Shown here in pieces: positions 9,555-31,266 of a stretch of 64,000 bases of DNA (position 1 is its first letter; every line of letters starts with the position of its first letter). The notes under the pieces were generated by a model, which did no database searches, was not told the origin of the DNA, and worked only from the letters and a program-made list of their open reading frames with translations. The DNA is taken from IMG/VR virus record IMGVR_UViG_3300042892_005961, positions 124,001 to 188,000 of that record, one strand, 5' to 3'. Both the position numbers and the translations under genes were made by a program.

Positions 9555-10364
9555 TTATAAATAGTTTAATAGACCAAAACTCTCGTTTCTAAGCTTTTTA
9601 ATGGCCTTATCACGTAATTGTCTGATACGTTCTTTTGTACAACCGTATTCCTCTCCCAAGTCCTCTAAGTTTGATTCAACACCTGTTAGACCATAATATC
9701 TCTCAATAATAACTCTTTCTCTTTCATCTAAGACACTTAACATTGCAGAAACTTTTTTCTTTATTTCTTCAGGTGAGTTCATGATAGCGTCAGGTCTTTC
9801 CGCTTCTTTGTTTGGAATAATATCTATTAGTTGGTCACCGTCCTCATTAATCTCTCTATATAGACCAACACAGTATGGTAGACCACTTGACACCGGTTCT
9901 TCACTATTATTAATAAAGAAATTATCTTCTTGACTTAATTCTTCTTTTTTAGATTTCTGTGACTCTTGAACTAAATTTGATGGAAGACGTATTGTTCTTG
10001 CGTTTTCATTTAATGATGCCATTATTGATTGTCTAACCCACCACACTGCATATGAAATAAATTTTAATCCACTTGTGGGATCAAATCTTTCCGCTGCCTT
10101 CATTAAACCAATATTACCTTCAGATATTATGTCCATAATATCCATCCCTTGATTTTGAAACATTTTCGCAACCGATATAACAAATCTTAAATTACCTACA
10201 ACCAATTCATCGTATAAAAATTTCTTTTCATGTTTAGTTATGGTCTTATCGTTAAGTCTTTCAAAAATCACCTCTTGTCTTTCGTGTGATATAACAGGTA
10301 TTCTACGAATGTCCTTTATATACTGTTGTATTTCCTCGGTGTTGTTTAAGATGGATTTTTTCAT
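9555..10364 (-). CDS. rpoD: RNA polymerase sigma-70 family factor (primary-sigma-like, no region 1.1)
   Basis: Region 2 NLRFVISVAK...EGNIGLMKAAERFD...KFISYAVWWVRQSI; region 4 LEDLGEEYGCTKERIRQLRDKAIKKLR. Confidence 0.9.
   Translation of the reverse strand: MKKSILNNTEEIQQYIKDIRRIPVISHERQEVIFERLNDKTITKHEKKFLYDELVVGNLRFVISVAKMFQNQGMDIMDIISEGNIGLMKAAERFDPTSGLKFISYAVWWVRQSIMASLNENARTIRLPSNLVQESQKSKKEELSQEDNFFINNSEEPVSSGLPYCVGLYREINEDGDQLIDIIPNKEAERPDAIMNSPEEIKKKVSAMLSVLDERERVIIERYYGLTGVESNLEDLGEEYGCTKERIRQLRDKAIKKLRNESFGLLNYL
9556..9563 (-). promoter_or_regulatory. candidate late promoter TATTTATA
   Basis: Overlaps the sigma-factor stop codon, 13 nt upstream of ATG 9542. Confidence 0.45.
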
Positions 10365-10409
10365 GTGGTTGGTGTTTAATTGTGTATATATAAAAATAAG
10401 TAAAAAATA

Positions 10410-17433: not shown

Positions 17434-17458
17434 TAAATTTTTTATTATTATAAATTAA

Positions 17459-17494
17459 AATAACCCCCATATTAATTAAAATACAGGGGTTATT
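17459..17494 (-). terminator. possible terminator hairpin
   Basis: aataacccc...ggggttatt inverted repeat with long AT loop. Confidence 0.4.
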
Positions 17495-17499
17495 CTATA

Positions 17500-20320: not shown

Positions 20321-21262
20321 CTAATCTATTTGTTTCATTTTATATTCACTTAAGTTCCCTTGTAAATCGGCAATATCTTTATCCCCTTCTAATTTAATAC
20401 TCCACACTTTCCCCATTAGTTTTCCACAATTCAATCTATGGTATAATCTTTCTTGATCATTATACGCATCGGGATCTAGTACTATAACTATTTTTTTTGC
20501 ATTATTGTAGAGTTTCATAAATAAATGTTCACTAATAAACTTTCCTAACATTGGAATTGCATTAGGAATAAAAATACTATCGAAAGCACCTTCCACAATG
20601 TATATTGGTTCGTCCCAATTAATTAAATGTTCATTGAAAATAATTGTTTCCTTTTGTGCTTCAGGATTCATGTATTTTCTTTTTGTCTTCTGTAAATAAG
20701 AACGAGCAATAAAATAGTTTAATCTTTTATTTTCATCATAAGATGGAATGATAATCCTACTTTCATATGGGCCACTATAACAAAATCCAATATTGTATAT
20801 TTGCAACATCAAATCTGTTATGTGTCTATTCTTAATGTAGTTGTAAGCCTGCTTGTATTGTGGGGTCATCTTAAGTCCCATACTAGCATCTTTGAATGGA
20901 ACAAATTCTTTTGGTAATTTTACAGGTTTATATGTTCTTGCGGCAATTTCCTCATCATCTTCAGGTTTTAATAAAAGATATTTCTTTAATTGTTTTGGAT
21001 TACCAAACTTCTTAATTAACTTATAGATTGATCCGTGTGTACTATGTGTCTCAGCACATACCCAACATTTATAAACACCGTATTTGTAATTGATTTCAAG
21101 GTTTCCTTTACCGTCTCCTTTATCTAAACCTTTAATTTCGTGTGAACACACAGGGCAGTCAAAGGATACCTGATATCTATAATCATTATGATTCTTATAG
21201 TCACCAAATATATCTTCTAAAATATCAAATACGGCAGAATAGTCTACTTCTTGGGTGTTCAT
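20321..21262 (-). CDS. dnaG: DNA primase (zinc finger plus TOPRIM)
   Basis: CPVC...CWVC zinc finger, IVEGAFD, LDPDA; start placed at MNTQEV (21262). Confidence 0.85.
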   Translation of the reverse strand: MNTQEVDYSAVFDILEDIFGDYKNHNDYRYQVSFDCPVCSHEIKGLDKGDGKGNLEINYKYGVYKCWVCAETHSTHGSIYKLIKKFGNPKQLKKYLLLKPEDDEEIAARTYKPVKLPKEFVPFKDASMGLKMTPQYKQAYNYIKNRHITDLMLQIYNIGFCYSGPYESRIIIPSYDENKRLNYFIARSYLQKTKRKYMNPEAQKETIIFNEHLINWDEPIYIVEGAFDSIFIPNAIPMLGKFISEHLFMKLYNNAKKIVIVLDPDAYNDQERLYHRLNCGKLMGKVWSIKLEGDKDIADLQGNLSEYKMKQID

Positions 21263-21289
21263 GATTATAATATAATAAAAAAGTATGAT

Positions 21290-21325
21290 AAAAAAAAATG
21301 GGAGCCGGACACCACGCCGACTCCC
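21290..21325 (-). terminator. intrinsic terminator
   Basis: 9-bp GC stem (one G-U pair, so minus-strand specific) followed by A and U9. Confidence 0.75.
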
Positions 21326-21360
21326 TCCAACCAAACTTGTATTTCTACAAGTCCCGTCCT
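21290..21360 (-). ncRNA. candidate small structured RNA (GAAA-tetraloop hairpin plus terminator hairpin)
   Basis: GC-rich island; ACUUGUA-GAAA-UACAAGU stem, GGGAGUCGG/CCGGCUCCC stem followed by a U-run; TATTTATA immediately upstream. Confidence 0.45.
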
Positions 21361-21362
21361 AA

Positions 21363-21370
21363 TATAAATA
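21363..21370 (-). promoter_or_regulatory. candidate late promoter TATTTATA
   Basis: Not followed by a plausible start codon; precedes the structured RNA. Confidence 0.45.
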
Positions 21371-21414
21371 TATCTTTTACAGCTCGTAAAGTAAAACTTT
21401 AGTTGCCGAATATT

Positions 21415-22023
21415 TTAAGATGTTTGTTTGTTCATGTTAACATAACCAATAACGCAACATGCAGCATCAGCCATGTCATAATTTTCTTTTTTAAGATTAC
21501 CCGTTTTACCGTATAACCAATTGATATCGGGACATACATTATTAACGTGTTCCCAAATAACGTGTTTCTTATCAATATCTCTTGGGTATCCACCAAATAA
21601 AACATTACGTCCTTTATCATTTGGACCAACCAAATCAGGGAATGCAAATTTTCTTGAGTTATACGTTGAAATGAATGTTGGTAATACTCCTAATACATCG
21701 TAACAGTTCTTAAGTATCAATGTGTTATAACGTAATAATGTTCCTATAGTATAAATGTTATTTGACTGCAACAATGGTTCTTCAATAATAACACGAAGAA
21801 TTCCCATGTCTTTATAACTTTCCAAATGTTTTTTAAATGCGTCGGCCTTTTTAATTAATTCCTCAATCTTATCTTCTGGTTGTGGTTTAATTTTTGGTGA
21901 AAAATGTGTTAGTTCTAATAATTTAGAACCCGTCATATCAAATAAAGCAAATCCGATCGTCTTTGTGGAAATATCAAGACCGAGAATCTTTGGTTTGTTT
22001 TTGAAATTAATATCTATACTCAT
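21415..22023 (-). CDS. ruvC: RuvC-like Holliday junction resolvase
   Basis: ILGLDISTKTIGFA, VIIEE, DMADA. Confidence 0.8.
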   Translation of the reverse strand: MSIDINFKNKPKILGLDISTKTIGFALFDMTGSKLLELTHFSPKIKPQPEDKIEELIKKADAFKKHLESYKDMGILRVIIEEPLLQSNNIYTIGTLLRYNTLILKNCYDVLGVLPTFISTYNSRKFAFPDLVGPNDKGRNVLFGGYPRDIDKKHVIWEHVNNVCPDINWLYGKTGNLKKENYDMADAACCVIGYVNMNKQTS

Positions 22024-22062: not shown

Positions 22063-24186
22063 TTAGAAGTCTAATTTTATTGCAAAAACCTGTGTTCCTG
22101 TTCTTTTAATTGGTGTAGATGTTTTAGCAATCACTAACGGTTCTTTTAATGAATCTAATAATGCGACTTCGGTAATATATTTATCGGTTGTAATTTCAGT
22201 TTGTGTTGTTCCCGTAAACCTTGTTGGGTTTTGTGATGTTAAGAATTGCGTAGATGGTAAGTTTATTAACATATTCATTTCTTCAATATCGGTTGCCCTA
22301 ACTAATCTAACACTACCAGGGAATGGTTGTTCGTCACCAAATTGTGGTTGTGTTGTTGATCCTGTTGTGTTCCACAAATAATCAGTTGTTACACCTGACA
22401 TATGGTCTTCTAAATCAAATGACGTTCCACCAGTGTAATCACTTTTTGTAATTGTAAACGTATAGTTAACCAAATTTATTGGGTCAATATATCCACTAGT
22501 ATATCCTGATATCTTTGATGTTATATCAATTTTTATCCATCCGTTTGGTGTTGGTGTTGTCCCTGTTTGTACTAATGCATAAAATTTGTCAGCAATAAAA
22601 CCATCTTTAATACCGCTTGGGGTAGTGTACATATTTGGAAATGCTCCTGTATTAAATTTAAATGTTAATTGTGAAGGGGTTCCGTTCCCTGTTATTTTAT
22701 TAAAATAATTGCATGGTAATGCATTTAATGTAGATCCACTAGTACTTGTATCTCCAAACATATATGTAAACCAAACAGTATCTCCTGTGGTTGGTAGTAA
22801 GGAATTAATCGCTGTTCCGTCACTTGGTACCGATCCCAATTTAGGTGACGGTAACGTATACCGTCTATTAGATCTATAATCTAACATTGCAACCAACTCT
22901 TGATCGTCGAATACAACTATTTTGTTATTAATAAAAACTTTACCTACTTTATTAGTTTGTTCATCTAACAAATATCTAAATTTTAATTCAAATCTAGAAC
23001 CTGTTGTTCCTGAAAATGGTTTAATGTAATAATCAACAGTATCCATTGTAAATTTTGCACCAAACGTATCGGTTGTATTTCTATGATAATGAATAAATGG
23101 GATATAAATTTCAAAATATTCTGTATCGCTAATTTCATCTCCGTCTTCATTTGTTACTATACTAATATCACAAGCATTTACACCCGATGGTGTACAATGA
23201 CTAATATAATCATCATATTTAAAAAATCTTTCAGGATCATTTGTAACATCTCCAAGTTCAGAATAATGTATAATTGCAATACACCTTTGTTCTGACGGTA
23301 AAACTTCAACTAATTCATCGAATGAATTTTTAAATGTAGTTCCTGTTATAGTTGTTCCTACAAAATTTGTAAATGTTTGTCCTGATTTTGTATATCCTAA
23401 TAATTGTTTTGTTGAAACATATTGATTACTATTATAACCACTTAAACTTTCATCTAAATCATTTGTTGGGTAATCTGCCCCGATTGGTTTGTCCGACCAT
23501 ACTGTATTTAATCTCCATGAATTAAGTTGTTGTGTATAATCAATTGGGTTAAATATGTCAGTTGTTGGTGATTCGTCGAAATATTCATTTAATACTACTT
23601 GTACATTACCTGTTAGTCCTGTTAAATTAGGGAGTTTACGATCTAGTGTTAATGTATTATCTGTTTTTGATACTACCTTATAGATCATACTATTTGTTTG
23701 TCCCGTAATTGTTGTACTTGAAAAACCATCTAAAACTACTGTTATAAAATCATTTGGTTTAAAATTCGTACCATCCACCACAACGAGACTTGTTGTTCCA
23801 CTTAGTTTACTATATGTTAATGGTTGTGGTGTTGTTTTTACTGTTGGTGCGGTTGAATACATAGATACAAATCCAGCACTACCCATTTCATTTCTTAAAG
23901 TTGTAGTTGAACTATTACTAATTGGTGTTCCGTATGTTGTTGAAGTTAAGACATCGCTACCTAAAGAATATGGATATTTTACCCCTGATTCGTTATCAAA
24001 TGGGGAAAATACTTTTTGTTGTCCTGTTGTTCCTGTTAAACCACTAAAAATTGTATTATAATCATATTCAGAATCTCCAATTTGAAAGAATTCAATATTG
24101 AAACTACCTTTGGCAATTGCCTTTCTACCCTCATTTGTTATTCGGGCTGTTAAATATTCTGCGTGATTACTGTTTAAAAAACTCAT
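22063..24186 (-). CDS. tail fibre/baseplate attachment protein (tail-collar-like termini)
   Basis: N-terminal ARITNEGRKAIAKG..FFQIGDSE and C-terminal ITEVALLD...IAKTSTPIKR bracket a large T/G/S-rich insert. Confidence 0.6.
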   Translation of the reverse strand: MSFLNSNHAEYLTARITNEGRKAIAKGSFNIEFFQIGDSEYDYNTIFSGLTGTTGQQKVFSPFDNESGVKYPYSLGSDVLTSTTYGTPISNSSTTTLRNEMGSAGFVSMYSTAPTVKTTPQPLTYSKLSGTTSLVVVDGTNFKPNDFITVVLDGFSSTTITGQTNSMIYKVVSKTDNTLTLDRKLPNLTGLTGNVQVVLNEYFDESPTTDIFNPIDYTQQLNSWRLNTVWSDKPIGADYPTNDLDESLSGYNSNQYVSTKQLLGYTKSGQTFTNFVGTTITGTTFKNSFDELVEVLPSEQRCIAIIHYSELGDVTNDPERFFKYDDYISHCTPSGVNACDISIVTNEDGDEISDTEYFEIYIPFIHYHRNTTDTFGAKFTMDTVDYYIKPFSGTTGSRFELKFRYLLDEQTNKVGKVFINNKIVVFDDQELVAMLDYRSNRRYTLPSPKLGSVPSDGTAINSLLPTTGDTVWFTYMFGDTSTSGSTLNALPCNYFNKITGNGTPSQLTFKFNTGAFPNMYTTPSGIKDGFIADKFYALVQTGTTPTPNGWIKIDITSKISGYTSGYIDPINLVNYTFTITKSDYTGGTSFDLEDHMSGVTTDYLWNTTGSTTQPQFGDEQPFPGSVRLVRATDIEEMNMLINLPSTQFLTSQNPTRFTGTTQTEITTDKYITEVALLDSLKEPLVIAKTSTPIKRTGTQVFAIKLDF

Positions 24187-24211: not shown

Positions 24212-25522
24212 TTAATCACAAGGACAAGTTACGTTTGTAAATGATGAGAAGTATATTGCTGATGGATAGTTTGTTGCCATATAAGCACTATCTTTATTCG
24301 TGTCTATTCTTGAACAACATTCACTATTTATCGTCACAAAACTTAAATTACCCGCACTATAATCTACATAATATATTGCTGTTAAATCACATCTCTCATA
24401 CACATCATATGTTTGCGGTGTAGGAGTTGGTGGTAAAGGGGTTGAAGTTGGTGGTGCTCCTGAACAAGCTGTACAAGCTGTTTGTGCTGTTCCTGTTTGT
24501 GCCGAACCATCTCTCATAAATTCTCTTTCATCAGTACCATCAGAAACCCAAAATGTAGTGTTATTAGTCATATCACCATACACGCTACCATACATTGTGG
24601 AAGATAAACCTTTTACTTTTGTTAAATTACATAAAGACGTACCTACAACCGTAATATTAACATTACTATATTCACCACCAGTACATGCTGTTGGTCCGTT
24701 AACTAAACTAACATAACCACTAAACGTAGTTTCAAATGGAGTTGGTTGTGGTGTTGCAGTTGCCGGTAAAGGAGTTGGTGTTGTAGGACAACTACAAGGC
24801 GTTGATCCATAAGATATATCCGTAATACTTGCACCAACTGCGAATAATGAACCATTTTGAATACAATCATTTATTACTTGTGGTCCAATACCAAATGTTA
24901 AATCAATTGTCTCACCGCAACAATCAATATATCTAATATCACCTCCCGTATCAACCTCAAATTGTACAGATGTTACACAATTAGGTGTTGGGGTTGGGGT
25001 TACAGTTGCCGGTAATGGGGTTACAGTTGCCGGTAATGGTGTTACAGTTGCTGGTAATGGGGTTACTGTTGCCGGTAATGGGGTTACAGTTGCTGGTAAT
25101 GGGGTTACTGTTGGTGTATTTGTGGGAGTTGCCGTTGGTACAACTGTTGGTGTGGGAGTTGGTGTGGGAGTTGGTGTGGGAGTTGGTGTAGTCGGCATTC
25201 TTATAGTTAAATTATTATAATCAACACATTCCACACATATAACAGAGTCATCATCTTTTCCATTAAAATTTGATGGTATCACTCTAATTGTTTTTATTCC
25301 CTCGGGAACAACTACATATGTACCATTTAAACTTGATCTTGGAATATTGGAATATCCAACTAAAGGAAAATATTTTGACGAGTCAGATCCTGAAAGGGAT
25401 CCTGTACATAAGGATCCAGAATTGTTGGTACAATCCTCTAAACTTCCCGTACAGGCATACAAATCAACATTTAATATTGATACTCCTAAAGTAAATCCTG
25501 TTAATCGTATTGTATATGACAT
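24212..25522 (-). CDS. modular virion decoration/adhesin-like protein: N-domain, Pro/Thr stalks, three Cys-bounded modules
   Basis: PTPT and (TVTPLPA)5 linkers; two modules homologous to those in 33676..35808. Confidence 0.65.
   Translation of the reverse strand: MSYTIRLTGFTLGVSILNVDLYACTGSLEDCTNNSGSLCTGSLSGSDSSKYFPLVGYSNIPRSSLNGTYVVVPEGIKTIRVIPSNFNGKDDDSVICVECVDYNNLTIRMPTTPTPTPTPTPTPTPTVVPTATPTNTPTVTPLPATVTPLPATVTPLPATVTPLPATVTPLPATVTPTPTPNCVTSVQFEVDTGGDIRYIDCCGETIDLTFGIGPQVINDCIQNGSLFAVGASITDISYGSTPCSCPTTPTPLPATATPQPTPFETTFSGYVSLVNGPTACTGGEYSNVNITVVGTSLCNLTKVKGLSSTMYGSVYGDMTNNTTFWVSDGTDEREFMRDGSAQTGTAQTACTACSGAPPTSTPLPPTPTPQTYDVYERCDLTAIYYVDYSAGNLSFVTINSECCSRIDTNKDSAYMATNYPSAIYFSSFTNVTCPCD
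24486..24580. repeat. 95-bp perfect direct repeat, copy 1
   Basis: Identical to 34034..34128 by eye alignment. Confidence 0.85.
24997..25101. repeat. 21-bp tandem repeat x5 (TVTPLPA)
   Basis: gggttacagttgccggtaatg units with minor variants. Confidence 0.85.
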
Positions 25523-25557: not shown

Positions 25558-25583
25558 AAAACCCCTTAAAATAAAGGGGTTTT
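25558..25583 (-). terminator. intrinsic terminator
   Basis: aaaacccctt-aaaata-aaggggtttt 10-bp stem. Confidence 0.7.
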
Positions 25584-26214: not shown

Positions 26215-29200
26215 TTAAGGTTGTTCAGCACAAACACTTTTGTCCGATACCTGACCAGTATATGAAATTCTTCCTGAATATGGTGATCCTCCACTATTTA
26301 AAGCGAATGAGTGATATTCATTTTCACCGGTATATACGTTTACTAAATTAGGATCTGTAAAGAATTGTTCTACATTAAATGGTTGATCTGCCGCCGCATA
26401 TGCTAGAATATAGAAATCCTGACCGTAATTTTGACAAGCCAAACTCGATGATGTATAAGATGGTCCTAATTGATAAGCATACGATGTTGCAGGTACAGGT
26501 GTGTCTGTAGGTACCGGTGTTGCCGTTGGTGGGAATGGTGTTGGTGTTGGTGATTCTGTTGGTACGTTTGTTGGTACTGCTGTTGGTACGTTTGTTGGTA
26601 CTGCTGTTGGTATTGCTGTTGGTACGTTTGTTGGTACGTTTGTTGGTACGTTTGTTGGTACGTTAGTTGGTACTGCTGTTGGTACGTTAGTTGGTACTGG
26701 TGTTGGTGTTGGTCCACAATATGTACAATCACTTGATATGTTACAAGTATTACCACATTCAACATCAGTTAATAAACCTGAATTAATAATTGGAGCTGTT
26801 CCACCTTGTAGACAATGCTGTCTACTTGTACCAGGTAATAAATTAATTGATTGTTCAGTTCCATTACAATTTGTTATTGTATAGTTTCCTGTTGTTCCAC
26901 CTTCATTATAAATTGTCCAACATATACAAGGTAATGGTGTCGAAGTTGGTATTGCTGTTGGTACGTTTGTAGGTACTGCTGTTGGTACGTTTGTTGGTAC
27001 TGCTGTTGGTATTGCTGTTGGTACGTTTGTTGGTACGTTTGTTGGTACGTTAGTTGGTATGTTAGTTGGTATGTTAGTTGGTATATTGGTTGGTTCTGGT
27101 GTATTAGTTGGGACCGCCGTTGGTACGTTAGTTGGTATGTTGGTTGGTATGTTGGTTGGTATATTGGTTGGTACTGCTGTCGGTACTGCTGTTGGTACGT
27201 TAGTTGGTAATGGTGTTGGTGTGCTGTAGATAACATCAACATCAACATTAAAGTTACAATCTGGCGTTGGAGTTGGAGTTGGTGTTGTAGTGTTAGTAGG
27301 TGTTGGGGTTGGTGTATTTGTCGCTGGTAATGGCGTAGGAGTTGGTGTATTTGTTGCGGATTCCGGTAATGGTGTTGGAGTATTTGTATTTGTTGGTGTA
27401 GGAGTTGGTGTACTATAGATAACATCAACATCAACATTAAAGTTACAATCTGGTGTTGGAGTTGCGGTATTTGTTGGTGTTGGAGTTGGGGTATTTGTTG
27501 GTGTTGGAGTTGGGGTATTAGTTGCTAATTCTGGTGTATTTGTATTTGTTGGTGTTGGGGTTGGTGTTGGTGTACCATATATAATGTCCACATTTATTTC
27601 AAAATCACAATTTGGTGTAGAAGTTGGTGTACTAGTTGGTGTTGGAGTATTTGTATTTGTTGGTGTAGGAGTTGGTGTACTATATACAACTAAAACATCA
27701 ACATTAAAGTTACAATCTGGTGTTGGTGTAGGTGTTGCAGTGTTAGTAGGTGTTGGAGTTGGGGTACTATAAAATATTTCTACGTCAACAGCAAACTCAC
27801 AATTTGGTGTGGCTGTTGGGGTTGGTGTTGGGGTTGGTGTACTAGTAACAACTAAAACATCAACTAAGAAATTACAATTTGGTGTAGGTGATGGAGTAGG
27901 TGTTGGTGTACTAGTAACAACTAAAACATCAACATTAAAATTACAATCTGGTGTTGGGGTTGGTGTTGGGGTTGGTGTACTAGTAACAACTAAAACATCA
28001 ACATTAAAATTACAATCTGGTGTTGGGGTTGGTGTTGGTGTATTTGTTGCAGGTGATGCCGTTACTGTTGGTGTTGGGGTGGAAGGTAATGGTGTTGCAG
28101 TTGCTGGTAATGGTGTAGCTGTTGGTGTGGCTGTTGGTGTTGGTGTGTTTGTTGGAGTTGGTGTTGGTCCTGGCTCATATATCGCTAATCCTCCACTAAA
28201 TCTACAATCTTTCACATCATTTTGACCAATTGATACATATCCATAATCTAAATAATTATTTACTGTACAATCATTTGGACCGTATTTGTAAGATGTGAAT
28301 TTAATTTTTTCACGTCCTTCATTATCTATGAAAAATTCATATGATATTATTTTTTGTTTTGTTGTTCCTGTAATCGATGAATTACCAATTTCGGTTCCGT
28401 ATTGTGTGTTTTTACCTTCTCCATCTATAGTTGATCCAGAATAGGTGTTAATATATGTAATTGTATTTTGTATCGCCCTTTTCCACAGTATTTTTAATTG
28501 TTGGTCTATTTCACTATAAACCGAAAGGTTATTAGTTGTACCTCCACTATATAATTTAACACTAATACCATTAGTTGTAACGGTATTATCGTTATTAAAT
28601 GTTAATGTTGTTCCAGTTAATGAAGTTGCTCCACTGATTAAAACATATGTACATCCTGTAACATTTGTTGTTGTGTTTAATGCAGAAGCATTTTCAGGGT
28701 CAGTCATACCTGAATAAACTATACCGTCAATTTCAAATATTGGATAAAGTTTAACATAACCATCGTGTTTTGTTTCCCCATCTTCATCAATTTCAATAGA
28801 AAAACCAAGATCATCGTCAGCCTGTTGTATTAAATAATCAAAATAACTTGTAAATCCTGTTGGTATTTCTAAATCAAAATTAATGTGGTCTTCCGTTTCT
28901 GTAGGTTGACATCCATATCTATATTGATATTTTGATCTACCAAAAATATTATTTGAAATTAAATTACCTCCCGTCCATAAAGTTGTTGCAGGAATAATTT
29001 GATCGATAACACTTGTCCAATAAGGACTCATTTTTTCAATAAACAAATTAATGTCAGGAAATGTGTATGCTTTGTTAGGTGAAAAATCTCTAGTAATATA
29101 ATCTTGATAGATGTCCTCTAATGTAATATAATTCTTCTTATATTTTATTAAATTAGAATTTTTAATTTGTTGATGTATCATTAAATCGACATACTCAGCG

Positions 29201-31266
29201 AATGTTACTCCTGTTTGTGGTGTTAAACTATTTGTACCGAATGTTGTACCTGTTGGACCAAAGTCTCTAGATTTACGATATATGTCATAATCAACCGCTT
29301 GTGCTGATGATAAATAAACTTCAATATTTTTTCTATTTAATAATAAACCAGAATTATCATTAAGATTTTCTGTTTGATTATTATCAATAATATTTTTTAA
29401 TTTATATCCTGAGTCTAATCCTGGCAATTTTCTATAAACGTCAAAATAATCTTCACCATAGGTATATGCACTATTTTTAGTAACAATATTTTTAGTTCTT
29501 CCTGTTACCGTTGAATTATCGATATCAATCACTAATGGTGATTTATGATCTGTAGTATTATCATACCAACCAGATCCTTTTTGGAAAAAATATTCTGTTG
29601 ATCCCGTAATTCCTTTAGGTAATAACGTATCTCCATTAACGGGATAATTTTCAGAATTAAATGTTGTTGTACCTGTAGTTATACCAGTATAATATCTATA
29701 TGGAAGATATGTTACACCATTAATAGTTCCACCTGTTGGTAAGAATATTCCTGTTTTGTAAGTTTTAGTTCCCGATATAACATCATAAATGTCACCTTTT
29801 AAATCAAATGATTTAGGTAAAGATATTACCTTGTAAACATATTGATTAATTTTAATCATTGGTTCAGGAGCACCTAAAAATCTTAAAAAAAATTCTAAAG
29901 ATTGTCTTGTACCTTTTGATTTATAAATGTAAGCCAAGTTAACTAACAACCTTCGATAAAATTCATATTCGGCGTCTATTAAAGACGTTCCCGATACTAA
30001 TCCAGAATATTGTTGTGATGTCTTAGTGTATAATAATTCATCTAAACCTTTCTCATCAATTAAGTTAATTGTATCTAACCCTAAAGTATTTGCCAAGTTT
30101 TTTAACAATACATCGGGTACGTTATTAATACCGTCATAACTTACATTTCTCATGTAAGCAATATTATCAATATATTTTTTTACACTATCAAAACTTTGTC
30201 CATATAATTGAAATAATGATTCGGCCTTTTTATCGGGACTATCAAATTCAAACAATTGAGGTGATGTTAAAAACCTAACAAATAAGTTAGACTTATAATC
30301 ATCAATTTCATCTGCTATATTACTTAAATTTGTTAAATAACTATCATATTCTAAACCTGTAATTTTAATGTTCCAATCTTCCTTATCGGATAACGGCCAA
30401 CTATAATTTACTGAAATTAATTCGGTTTTTGTTTCGTCAAAACTATCTCTTGGTACCTTAAAACTTGAAGTATATTTTGGAAAAGTGTCTCTGTTTAATA
30501 AACTTTCCTCTAAATCATCTAAACCTTTAAAGAACTCTTCAACAACACCATCATTTGGTTTAATTAATATATTTTCAGAAAACCCCGTTAAGTTATCAAA
30601 TGGTTTACCACTTACCTTTAATGAAATTATATTATCACTATTAGGTTCAATATATGAAATTACATCATATGTTTTTCCACTTATTGAAATTAAATAGTTT
30701 TTAAAAGAAGTATAAAAATCTCTGTTTTTATTAATTGAAGGTAATATGGTATTACTTTTCGGTGTAACCATAACAATCGAAAATGGATTGTATAGTTTAC
30801 TGTACTCAACTTTAAATTGAGTGGTGTTACTTATATTATCATATGTAATATTATTAGCGGTAAAATTCGTTACTTTAATTAAACTATTAGAATCAATTAA
30901 AATAGCCGCAGGAAAATTATTAATTATATTAGTTGTCGCAACACCTAGTCTACTTTTTAATGATCCAAATAAAGATTTAGCAGCATCATTTTTAGAACCT
31001 TTAAATTTTATTTCTTTATTTTTACTTGTAGTACCACTCGTAGTTGTACTTGAAGTTTGTCCTTTTAAATCATCTAATGTTAAAAAATTAGAAAACGGAT
31101 TTGTTTTAAAATTCTTTGTATCTCTTTGTATTACCTCACTATCTAACGCAAAGTTCGTATTAGTCAATTGACCGGTACCCGTGGTAATTTGATTACCGAC
31201 TAGATTGTCACTGAATGTATCGGCACCACTCGCAGCTTGACTTGGAATTTTACGTAATTTTGCCAT
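26215..31266 (-). CDS. large baseplate wedge-like protein (P2 gpI/T4 gp7-like core) with ~600-aa Pro/Thr-rich C-terminal stalk and tip modules
   Basis: [14 protein letters not shown]...[18 protein letters not shown] motif; repeats and tip from about aa 1035. Confidence 0.65.
26558..26700. repeat. 12-bp tandem repeat block ([12 protein letters not shown])
   Basis: gttggtacgttt-type units. Confidence 0.85.
26945..27210. repeat. 12-bp tandem repeat block (PTNV/PTNI/PTAV)
   Basis: gttggtacgttt / gttggtatgtta units. Confidence 0.85.
27222..28017. repeat. eight dispersed CxFxVxVxxx(Y/T)(S/G) units separated by PT linkers
   Basis: [17 protein letters not shown] and variants in the translation. 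Confidence 0.85.

What the first reader, a model, noticed from the sequence alone, without database searches (positions are those of the whole stretch)
21290..21370. Candidate novel phage small RNA (~65-70 nt) between ruvC and primase
Seen (minus strand): AGGACGGGACUUGUA-GAAA-UACAAGUUU-GGUUGGA-GGGAGUCGG-CGUGGUGU-CCGGCUCCC-AUUUUUUUUU. This is a GNRA-capped 7-9 bp stem, a short purine-rich linker and a terminator, with G-U pairs that work only on this strand. It is strikingly GC-rich for this genome and has a TATTTATA box 2 nt upstream with no credible ORF. It contains several GGA motifs and a GGAGG. Inference: a late sRNA (antisense regulator, protein sponge or anti-defence RNA) or an attenuator for primase.
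Basis: partly seen in the sequence, partly recalled or inferred. Interest (0 to 1): 0.65.

Follow-up and report, generated by a model that had tools for sequence, protein, structure and literature searches.

The report
Conserved small RNA gene in phages
Between the RuvC-like and primase genes of a clade of large uncultured aquatic phages lies a roughly 70-nt two-hairpin RNA element with its own promoter-like signal and a terminator; it matches no known RNA family, evolution has kept its shape and three short G/U-rich patches intact, and its function is still unknown.

Summary
On the minus strand, 21360-21290 holds a GAAA-capped hairpin (P1), a short linker, and a GC-rich hairpin (P2) followed by U9.

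It is not a chance fold. The same element sits at the same place (RuvC-like gene, element, primase) in about 110 viral contigs. Across 51 distinct variants, 96.9% of pair positions stay paired, and 14 of 14 pairs in the P1 apex and P2 show compensatory changes. The stem sequences have drifted to neutral-like identity (0.40). Three patches stay about 90% identical: 5' GACGGGA, UUUrGUUGG, and the P2 loop GUGGUG.

A promoter-like signal precedes it: TTTAC(T/A), a spacer of exactly 17 nt with variable sequence, then TATATT. The element is single-copy in the window. It matches nothing in Rfam, GenBank phages or sampled cellular genomes.

No alternative antiterminator helix is conserved.

Best reading: a new phage-encoded small RNA that also insulates the RuvC-like gene from primase. 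It probably acts in trans through its G/U-rich patches. The only candidate target is the C/A-rich leader of the phage sigma-factor gene, and that evidence is only suggestive. A factor-dependent attenuator of primase remains a live rival.

The parts
21390..21395 (-). -35-like hexamer TTTACT of the element's promoter-like signal
   Evidence: One search finds TTTACT-17-TATATT. In one search TTTAC(T/A)/TTTATA is kept in most of 51 variants at exactly 17 nt from TATATT, while the spacer sequence drifts (mean identity 0.40).
21363..21372 (-). -10-like TATATT (21372-21367) overlapping the TATTTATA box (21370-21363)
   Evidence: The TATTTAT box class is enriched before gene starts: 9 of 23 minus-strand copies lie within 40 nt of an ATG, a zone that is about 3% of the sequence.
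21290..21360 (-). Predicted small RNA, about 69-71 nt; the 5' end is inferred from promoter spacing at 21360-21358 and the 3' end lies in the U9 run
   Evidence: Covariance model R1 hit at 21288-21361, 88.1 bits, E 2.6e-21. It is the only hit in the window; the next best is 14.7 bits.
21329..21358 (-). P1 hairpin: an invariant G.U-rich basal helix (GAC/GUU, a G.G mismatch, GGAC/GUUU) and a variable apical stem with a GAAA loop
   Evidence: All 5 apical pairs show double changes. The apex is GAAA, UUAAAA or longer in relatives. The basal patches are 0.89-0.94 identical.
21326..21328 (-). Inter-hairpin linker (GGA here; GGU plus 0-3 nt in relatives), part of the invariant GUUGG(U) patch
21300..21325 (-). 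P2 hairpin, the intrinsic-terminator stem, with the invariant loop N-GUGGUG-U at 21316-21309
   Evidence: ranks it the top terminator-like site in 15-28 kb. In one search all 9 pairs show double changes and 98.9% are paired. Stem identity is 0.40 and loop identity 0.92.
21290..21298 (-). U9 tract of the terminator
   Evidence: Relatives keep T7-T9.
21263..21291 (-). Downstream start cassette for primase: TTATCA (21291-21286), an 11-nt spacer, TATATT (21274-21269), then 6 nt to the ATG at 21262
   Evidence: The TATATT-like box lies 5-9 nt before the ATG in relatives. The cassette is duplicated in L091, once before the inserted aminotransferase gene and once before primase.
20321..21262 (-). DnaG-type DNA primase gene (downstream neighbour)
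21415..22023 (-). RuvC-like resolvase gene (upstream neighbour), whose transcripts would end at P2
   Evidence: synteny.
10365..10375 (-). Candidate trans target (weak evidence): ACACCAACCAC immediately before the AUG of the phage sigma-70-family gene (9555-10364)

Best explanation
This is a real, clade-specific small RNA gene of about 70 nt. A promoter-like signal (TTTACT, 17 nt, TATATT/TATTTATA) would start transcription at the base of hairpin P1. The GC-rich hairpin P2 plus U9 would end it, and the same terminator would also stop transcripts coming from the RuvC-like gene before they reach the primase gene. Primase carries its own TATATT box 6 nt before its ATG. Selection keeps the two helices as shapes and keeps three G/U-rich patches as sequences: the wobble-rich base of P1, GUUGG(U), and the hexaloop GUGGUG. 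I infer that the RNA works in trans through these patches, most likely by pairing with C/A-rich regions of mRNA leaders and blocking translation initiation. The one candidate target found is the leader of the phage's own sigma-factor mRNA, which would give a feedback on the phage transcription programme. Shown here: the structure, covariation, strand, synteny, single copy, promoter-like architecture and lack of a known family. Inferred: that a discrete transcript exists, that it acts in trans, and what it targets.
For: Structure and selection: 96.9% of 1062 pair cells are paired, against 69% in shuffles and at most 55% when partners are slid. The covariation score is 0.696 against 0.18, and 14 of 14 pairs in the P1 apex and P2 have compensatory changes. 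Every one of 51 variants folds alone into two hairpins, and the sense strand is more stable in 51 of 51. Stem identity is 0.40, equal to the promoter spacer, while the patches are 0.89-0.94 identical. Distribution: 74 of 74 loci with primase at 61% identity or more carry the element, and 38 further contigs do too. It always lies after the RuvC-like gene. It is absent from the group with about 50% primase identity. Independent unit: hexamers are conserved with a fixed 17-nt spacer of variable sequence, and the box belongs to a class enriched before gene starts. In L091 an aminotransferase gene separates the element from primase. No conserved antiterminator helix exists. Target hint: hexamers complementary to the loop or linker occur in 11 of 28 distinct sigma-gene leaders against 2 of 207 other leaders. 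In 772 further gene starts, the only genuine clade gene start I recognised (by its N-terminal sequence) among 15 raw hits is the sigma gene again. Duplex energies give MWU p of 1e-9 to 1e-11. The gene is a sigma-70-family factor.
Against: There are no expression data, so neither the 5' end nor a discrete transcript has been shown. The promoter type is inferred only. The sigma leaders are C-rich (0.23 against 0.10), and after shuffling each leader the signal is modest: mean z -1.2, with 7 of 30 at or below 5%. About 60% of lineages lack the complementary word even though their RNA patches are unchanged, so sigma cannot be the sole conserved target. The lineages are not independent. In the window, no initiation region beats the 1% background tail. 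An invariant, wobble-rich helix base and an invariant loop about 10 bp away would suit recognition by a protein just as well.
Confidence: 0.42

Rival explanations
1. It is a cis-acting leader or attenuator. Transcription from the element's promoter normally stops at P2. A phage or host factor, either a protein or a modified RNA polymerase, recognises the invariant patches on the nascent RNA and allows read-through into primase and the downstream replication and repair genes. The short RNA would then be a by-product, like the short transcript made from lambda PR' to tR' before Q acts.
For: The order is promoter, structured leader, strong terminator, then the primase ATG 38 nt later. The position upstream of primase is fixed in about 110 contigs. 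Invariant sequence in a terminator loop and in the preceding helix base would fit a recognition site for an antitermination factor. The -35 region of the putative primase promoter falls in the T-run and matches the consensus poorly.
Against: No conserved alternative helix appears when the P2 3' arm or the P1 5' strand is blocked, so it is not an RNA-only switch. A TATATT-like box is conserved 5-9 nt before the primase ATG, as before other genes, which suggests primase has its own start signal. In L091 a 407-aa aminotransferase gene lies between the element and primase, and the start cassette is duplicated. No candidate factor has been identified.
Confidence: 0.25
2. It is a protein-binding or decoy RNA. 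The invariant wobble-rich helix base and the GUGGUG loop would be docking sites for a host or phage protein, for example sequestering a host RNA-binding protein or a defence sensor. Alternatively, the UGGUG in the loop could pair with tRNA 3' ends (CACCA).
For: The sequence invariance sits in a helix base carrying G.U pairs and a G.G mismatch, and in a loop about 10 bp away. The helices between them are free to change sequence and, for P1, length. That pattern is typical of protein recognition. No convincing conserved mRNA target was found.
Against: There are only two short motifs and a single copy per genome, unlike known multi-site sponges. No partner has been identified. The match to the tRNA 3' end is only 5 nt and comes from memory of tRNA ends, not from a test.
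Confidence: 0.17
3. It is only a terminator or insulator. The conserved patches would reflect DNA-level signals instead, such as a regulator binding site, a replication-origin element or an origin primer transcript next to the primase gene.
For: P2 plus U9 is a textbook intrinsic terminator. In many phages and plasmids the origin lies near the replication genes (general knowledge). An AT-rich stretch follows the terminator.
Against: P1 is not needed for termination, yet it is conserved with covariation. G.U pairs make the structure strand-specific in 51 of 51 variants, which points to RNA rather than duplex DNA. The spacing between the two G/U patches varies by several nt, which fits poorly with a rigid DNA-binding site. 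There are no iterons or repeats (single model hit). Cumulative GC skew shows no turning point at 21.3 kb.
Confidence: 0.1

Closest known systems
GcvB-type riboregulators of enterobacteria (G/U-rich seed pairing with C/A-rich leader elements); comparison from established knowledge
   Same: It has conserved single-stranded G/U-rich segments and ends in an intrinsic terminator with a U tail. The only candidate target region is a C/A-rich stretch directly upstream of a start codon.
   Different: There is no homology, since no Rfam match reached even E 10. It is much shorter, about 70 nt. The G/U patches lie in a helix base, a linker and a terminator loop rather than in a long open region. The host is probably not an Hfq-using enterobacterium. 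The target evidence is weak.
sRNAs embedded in 3' UTRs that have their own promoter and share the upstream mRNA's terminator (for example DapZ, MicL); from established knowledge
   Same: The element lies 50-60 nt after the stop codon of the RuvC-like gene. It has its own promoter-like signal and uses the terminator that would also end transcripts of that gene.
   Different: The promoter is intergenic rather than inside the upstream coding sequence. It is phage-encoded. Expression and processing are untested.
Phage antitermination RNA sites: HK022 put (two hairpins just downstream of a promoter) and lambda nut boxB; also the short lambda PR'-tR' transcript
   Same: There are two hairpins of about 65-70 nt directly after a promoter, and a short terminated transcript upstream of a gene block.
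   Different: From knowledge, put RNAs are not themselves followed by a U tract and act on downstream terminators. The boxB-type loop is not conserved here: the P1 apex varies between GAAA, UUAAAA and longer loops. No factor or read-through has been shown.
Plain intrinsic (Rho-independent) terminator
   Same: P2 plus U9 meets the definition and is conserved.
   Different: An ordinary terminator has no reason to keep an invariant loop sequence, a second covarying hairpin, an invariant helix base, or a dedicated promoter 10 nt upstream.

Membership tests
Any Rfam 15 family (4227 models) | Score at or above the family's gathering threshold | tested here: not met
   no match in the whole window; at E up to 10 there are only junk matches of 11-16 bits against thresholds of 40-99.
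Intrinsic terminator | GC-rich hairpin immediately followed by a U tract on the transcribed strand | tested here: met
   9-bp stem with 7 GC pairs followed by T9; the stem is kept by covariation and relatives have T7-T9.
Trans-acting base-pairing sRNA (generic kind) | Own promoter upstream of the RNA | tested here: met
   In silico only. Conserved hexamers with a fixed 17-nt spacer of variable sequence, and the box class is enriched before gene starts.
Trans-acting base-pairing sRNA (generic kind) | Discrete stable transcript | not testable with these tools
Trans-acting base-pairing sRNA (generic kind) | Conserved accessible seed | tested here: met
   The loop GUGGUG and the GUUGG(U) patch are 0.89-0.92 identical, against 0.40 for stems and spacer. 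The loop is unpaired in the single-sequence folds that my script parsed correctly.
Trans-acting base-pairing sRNA (generic kind) | Conserved complementary site in a target mRNA | tested here: inconclusive
   Sigma-gene leader: 11 of 28 against 2 of 207. Absent in about 60% of lineages and modest after the composition control.
GcvB family | Homology to the GcvB covariance model | tested here: not met
   The Rfam scan at E up to 10 gave no GcvB match.
Riboswitch / RNA-only transcription attenuator | Conserved alternative (antiterminator) helix that excludes the terminator | tested here: not met
   Constrained consensus folding finds no alternative helix. In 23 of 51 nascent RNAs the P2 5' arm stays fully unpaired.
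Riboswitch / RNA-only transcription attenuator | Ligand-binding aptamer | not testable with these tools
   No riboswitch class matches in Rfam. Ligand binding would need experiments.
Lambda nut (boxB) site | Conserved hairpin loop recognised by the N protein | tested here: not met
   The P1 apex is not conserved: GAAA, UUAAAA or longer inserts.
HK022 put RNA | Two-hairpin RNA that makes RNA polymerase resistant to termination in cis | not testable with these tools
   Only the two-hairpin layout after a promoter can be compared. Function would need transcription assays.
CsrB/RsmZ-type protein sponge | Multiple conserved GGA motifs in loops or single strands | tested here: not met
   GGA and GGAGG occur in this genome's linker and stem but are not conserved. 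The element is single-copy.
tRNA / tRNA-like gene | Cloverleaf detectable by ARAGORN | tested here: not met
   no tRNA or tmRNA in the window.

The most novel reading that the evidence does not exclude
The RNA is a phage-encoded riboregulator of the phage's own sigma factor. Its invariant G/U-rich loop and linker would pair with the C/A-rich leader of the sigma mRNA and so time the switch between transcription classes in a lineage of large phages that rely on host RNA polymerase. Alternatively, the same patches dock a host protein or tRNA 3' ends as a counter-defence decoy. Either would be a new RNA-based control layer in large phages that probably infect Bacteroidota.
Probability: 0.2. Interest if true: 0.75.

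Novelty: new member of a known kind. Interest (0 to 1): 0.58.

Why it matters
Few phage-encoded small RNAs have comparative support this strong, and almost none are known from large uncultured aquatic phages or from phages of Bacteroidota. This element offers about 110 natural instances, a clean covariation-supported structure and three invariant patches that define where to mutate. It is therefore a ready-made candidate RNA family and a direct handle on how these phages, which carry a sigma factor, organise gene expression around their replication genes. If the sigma-leader link is real, it would be a simple RNA feedback on a phage transcription programme. If the element is a factor-dependent attenuator, it marks the recognition site of an unknown antitermination system.

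Tried and rejected
- **Rfam:** the gathering and permissive scans gave nothing.
- **tRNA/tmRNA:** none found.
- **GenBank phages:** megablast of the locus and blastn of the element gave no relative, only AT-rich chance hits to the promoter part.
- **Cellular genomes:** the pattern scan returned 120 loci, and none is confirmed by the model.
- **Extra copies in the window:** none.
- **Riboswitch-type alternative folding:** none conserved.
- **Ad hoc pairing of GGUUGG with the P2 3' arm:** it works in some variants and fails in others on reading the alignment, so I rejected it.
- **G-quadruplex as antiterminator:** rejected, because the loop has only one GG in this genome and in several relatives.
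- **CsrA-like or Shine-Dalgarno-like reading of GGA/GGAGG:** not conserved.
- **Leader peptide or N-terminal extension of primase from the TTG at 21334:** rejected, because length changes break the frame.
- **ACACCAAC-type words at 25-28 kb as targets:** there are many, but they are Thr-Pro codon repeats in a 1683-aa protein. I treat the complementarity as incidental.
- **Pairing with the primase start (ACACC in codons 3-4):** not conserved in relatives.
- **Scan of translation-initiation regions in the window:** no site beyond the 1% background tail.
- **Literature:** searches found no description of this element. A paper on large aquatic 'moraphages' (PMC12619734) may concern related phages, but I could not link it to this clade.
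- **Not used:** the metagenome-contig scan, because the viral collection already gave ample relatives.

Full report
**What is in the sequence.** The parts are:

- P1: a 3-bp outer helix GAC/GUU, a G.G mismatch, a 9-bp stem and a GAAA loop (21358-21329).
- A 3-nt linker (21328-21326).
- P2: a 9-bp GC-rich stem with an 8-nt loop (21325-21300).
- An A, then nine U (21298-21290).

The minus strand folds at -31.1 kcal/mol with z = -5.3. The plus strand reaches only -19.0. The segment is 47% GC in a genome of about 31% GC. P2 is the top terminator-like site between 15 and 28 kb.

**Relatives.** No GenBank phage is close at the DNA level. The nearest cultured relative by primase protein is a Flavobacterium phage at 35% identity. 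IMG/VR holds a large clade of uncultured phages with primases 57-100% identical to this one, on contigs of up to 335 kb. One contig, IMGVR_UViG_3300042892_005961 (211 kb), is identical over the primase.

- All 74 loci with primase identity of 61% or more carry the element immediately upstream of the primase.
- A pattern scan plus the covariance model added 38 more contigs.
- In every case the RuvC-like gene lies upstream. Primase lies downstream in all full-length loci except L091.
- The six relatives at about 50% primase identity have a 38-nt spacer and no element.
- The model finds one copy in the 64-kb window: 88 bits, with 14.7 bits for the next hit.
- None of 120 pattern-matched loci from cellular genomes is confirmed by the model.

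**Evidence that it is a selected RNA structure.** On a structural alignment of 51 distinct variants:

- 96.9% of 1062 pair cells form standard pairs. Column shuffles give 69%, and sliding the partners gives at most 55%.
- The covariation score is 0.696 against 0.18.
- All 5 apical P1 pairs and all 9 P2 pairs show changes on both sides. This includes complete swaps of the G-rich and C-rich arms of P2.

Because that alignment was fitted to the model, I also folded each variant alone. All 51 give exactly two hairpins, and the sense strand is more stable than the antisense in 51 of 51 (mean -30.7 against -19.0).

Mean pairwise identity is 0.40 in the P2 stem and 0.58 in the P1 apical stem. The promoter spacer, which serves as a neutral-like yardstick, is also 0.40. 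Three patches are far more conserved: 0.94 for 5' GACGGGA, 0.89 for UUUrGUUGG and 0.92 for the P2 loop N-GUGGUG-U. The base of P1 is nearly invariant and full of G.U pairs (GU in 43-48 of 51 variants at three positions). It therefore has no covariation support of its own, but it does fix the strand. The P1 apex can be GAAA, UUAAAA or a longer insert, so the apex is a spacer rather than a recognition site.

**Is it its own transcription unit?** Upstream, most variants have TTTAC(T/A) or TTTATA, then exactly 17 nt of variable sequence, then TATATT, then 10-13 nt to the C of ACGGG (for the window). That places the predicted start at the A or G just before GACGGG, which is the foot of P1.

The overlapping TATTTAT(A) box belongs to a recurring class. 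9 of its 23 minus-strand copies in the window lie within 40 nt upstream of an ATG, a zone that is 3% of the sequence. They sit typically 5-7 nt from the ATG, which suggests many leaderless or near-leaderless mRNAs. From memory, the layout TTTR, about 14 nt, TAnnTTTR also resembles the Bacteroidota -33/-7 promoter type. That would fit the lack of Shine-Dalgarno sequences and the Flavobacterium affinity. I did not test this.

Downstream of the terminator, a conserved cassette follows: T-run, (A/G)TCA, 11 nt, TATATT, 5-9 nt, ATG. This suggests primase has its own start signal. In L091 a class-III aminotransferase gene sits between the element and primase. Both that gene and primase carry a copy of the cassette, while the element stays next to the RuvC-like gene. 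So the element is not strictly coupled to the primase start.

**Attenuator test.** If the P2 3' arm, or the P1 5' strand, is forbidden from pairing, consensus folding finds no alternative conserved helix. In nascent RNAs lacking the 3' arm, the P2 5' arm is fully unpaired in 23 of 51 variants and only weakly paired in the rest. An RNA-only switch of the riboswitch type is therefore unsupported. Antitermination by a protein that reads the invariant patches cannot be excluded, and it is my main rival explanation.

**Search for a trans target.** The invariant patches are G/U-rich, so targets should be C/A-rich. Within the window no initiation region beats the 1% background tail. The best site is ACACCAACCAC, directly before the AUG of the gene at 9555-10364. 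It matches both patches. That gene is a sigma-70-family factor (Pfam regions 2 and 4, E 6e-16 and 1e-12).

- In relatives the exact site is not conserved.
- Hexamers complementary to the loop or linker occur in 11 of 28 distinct sigma leaders, against 2 of 207 other leaders.
- Among 772 further gene starts there were 15 raw hits. On inspection, the only one I recognised as a genuine clade gene start is the sigma gene again, by its N-terminal sequence.
- Duplex energies differ strongly between sigma leaders and other leaders (MWU p of 1e-9 to 1e-11).
- The sigma leaders are unusually C-rich (0.23 against 0.10). Against shuffles of each leader the effect is modest: mean z -1.2, with 7 of 30 at or below 5%.
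- The lineages are phylogenetically related, and about 60% lack any such word although their RNA patches are unchanged.

I rate this as a lead, not a finding.

**Other readings considered and rejected.**

- The many ACACCAAC words at 25-28 kb are Thr-Pro codon repeats in a 1683-aa protein.
- GGA and GGAGG are not conserved.
- A G-quadruplex would need two GG in the loop, which this genome lacks.
- The ORF extension from the TTG at 21334 is broken by length changes in relatives.
- There is no Rfam family, no tRNA and no literature description.
- The linker variant AGUUGGUAG resembles the tRNA D-loop consensus from memory, but nothing else is tRNA-like.

**Verdict.** The element is a real, strongly selected structured RNA module: a promoter-like signal, two hairpins and a terminator. 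It is new at the family level and restricted, as far as sampled, to one clade of large aquatic phages. I put about 0.95 on that statement. On function, my estimates are:

| Reading | Estimate |
|---|---|
| Independently transcribed, trans-acting small RNA that also insulates the RuvC-like gene from primase (sigma leader as one specific target: about 0.2) | about 0.42 |
| Factor-dependent attenuator of the primase block | about 0.25 |
| Protein- or tRNA-binding decoy | about 0.17 |
| Terminator plus DNA-level signal or origin transcript | about 0.1 |

Transcript mapping would separate these quickly.

Noticed in passing
window 26215-31266 (-), repeats mainly 26540-28170: A 1683-aa ORF. Its C-terminal third consists of Thr-Pro and [10 protein letters not shown] linker repeats that separate repeated modules of about 20 aa with the motif [11 protein letters not shown]. 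This explains the local GC and GC-skew anomaly at 26-28 kb. Its ACA-CCA codon repeats happen to be complementary to the RNA's invariant UGGUGU.
   Followed up: partly
window 9555-10364 (-): A phage-encoded sigma-70-family factor (Pfam Sigma70_r2 and r4). Its 5' leader is unusually C/A-rich, unlike the AT-rich or leaderless starts of most other genes. Relatives share a TTAT(T/C)TTTA-like box upstream.
   Followed up: partly
window, whole; e.g. 5660, 24198, 25535, 26196, 32195, 41621, 43958, 63760 (-): A TATTTAT(A) box recurs 5-17 nt upstream of ATGs, and no Shine-Dalgarno sequences are visible anywhere. This suggests a promoter class that gives leaderless or very short-leader mRNAs, and a Bacteroidota-like host.
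   Followed up: partly
L091:12218-13441 (IMGVR_UViG_3300024581_003238): A class-III aminotransferase gene (Pfam E 3e-69) is inserted between the RNA element and the primase. The T-rich/TCA/TATATT/ATG start cassette is duplicated.
   Followed up: yes
window 21398-21414 (-): In most relatives the RuvC-like protein ends in ...KSGN-stop, encoded by AAATCCGGCAACTAA. In this genome the gene stops earlier (TAA at 21417-21415), and CGGCAACTAA survives as a non-coding relic just downstream.
   Followed up: no
window 25558-25583 and 17456-17497: Two further strong terminator-like hairpins. The first (AAAACCCCTT...AAGGGGTTTT) is symmetric and scores on both strands. Neither resembles the element.
   Followed up: no
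window 22063-24186 (-) and 24212-25522 (-): Large ORFs of 707 aa and 436 aa upstream of the RuvC-like gene have no Pfam or PHROG match.
   Followed up: no
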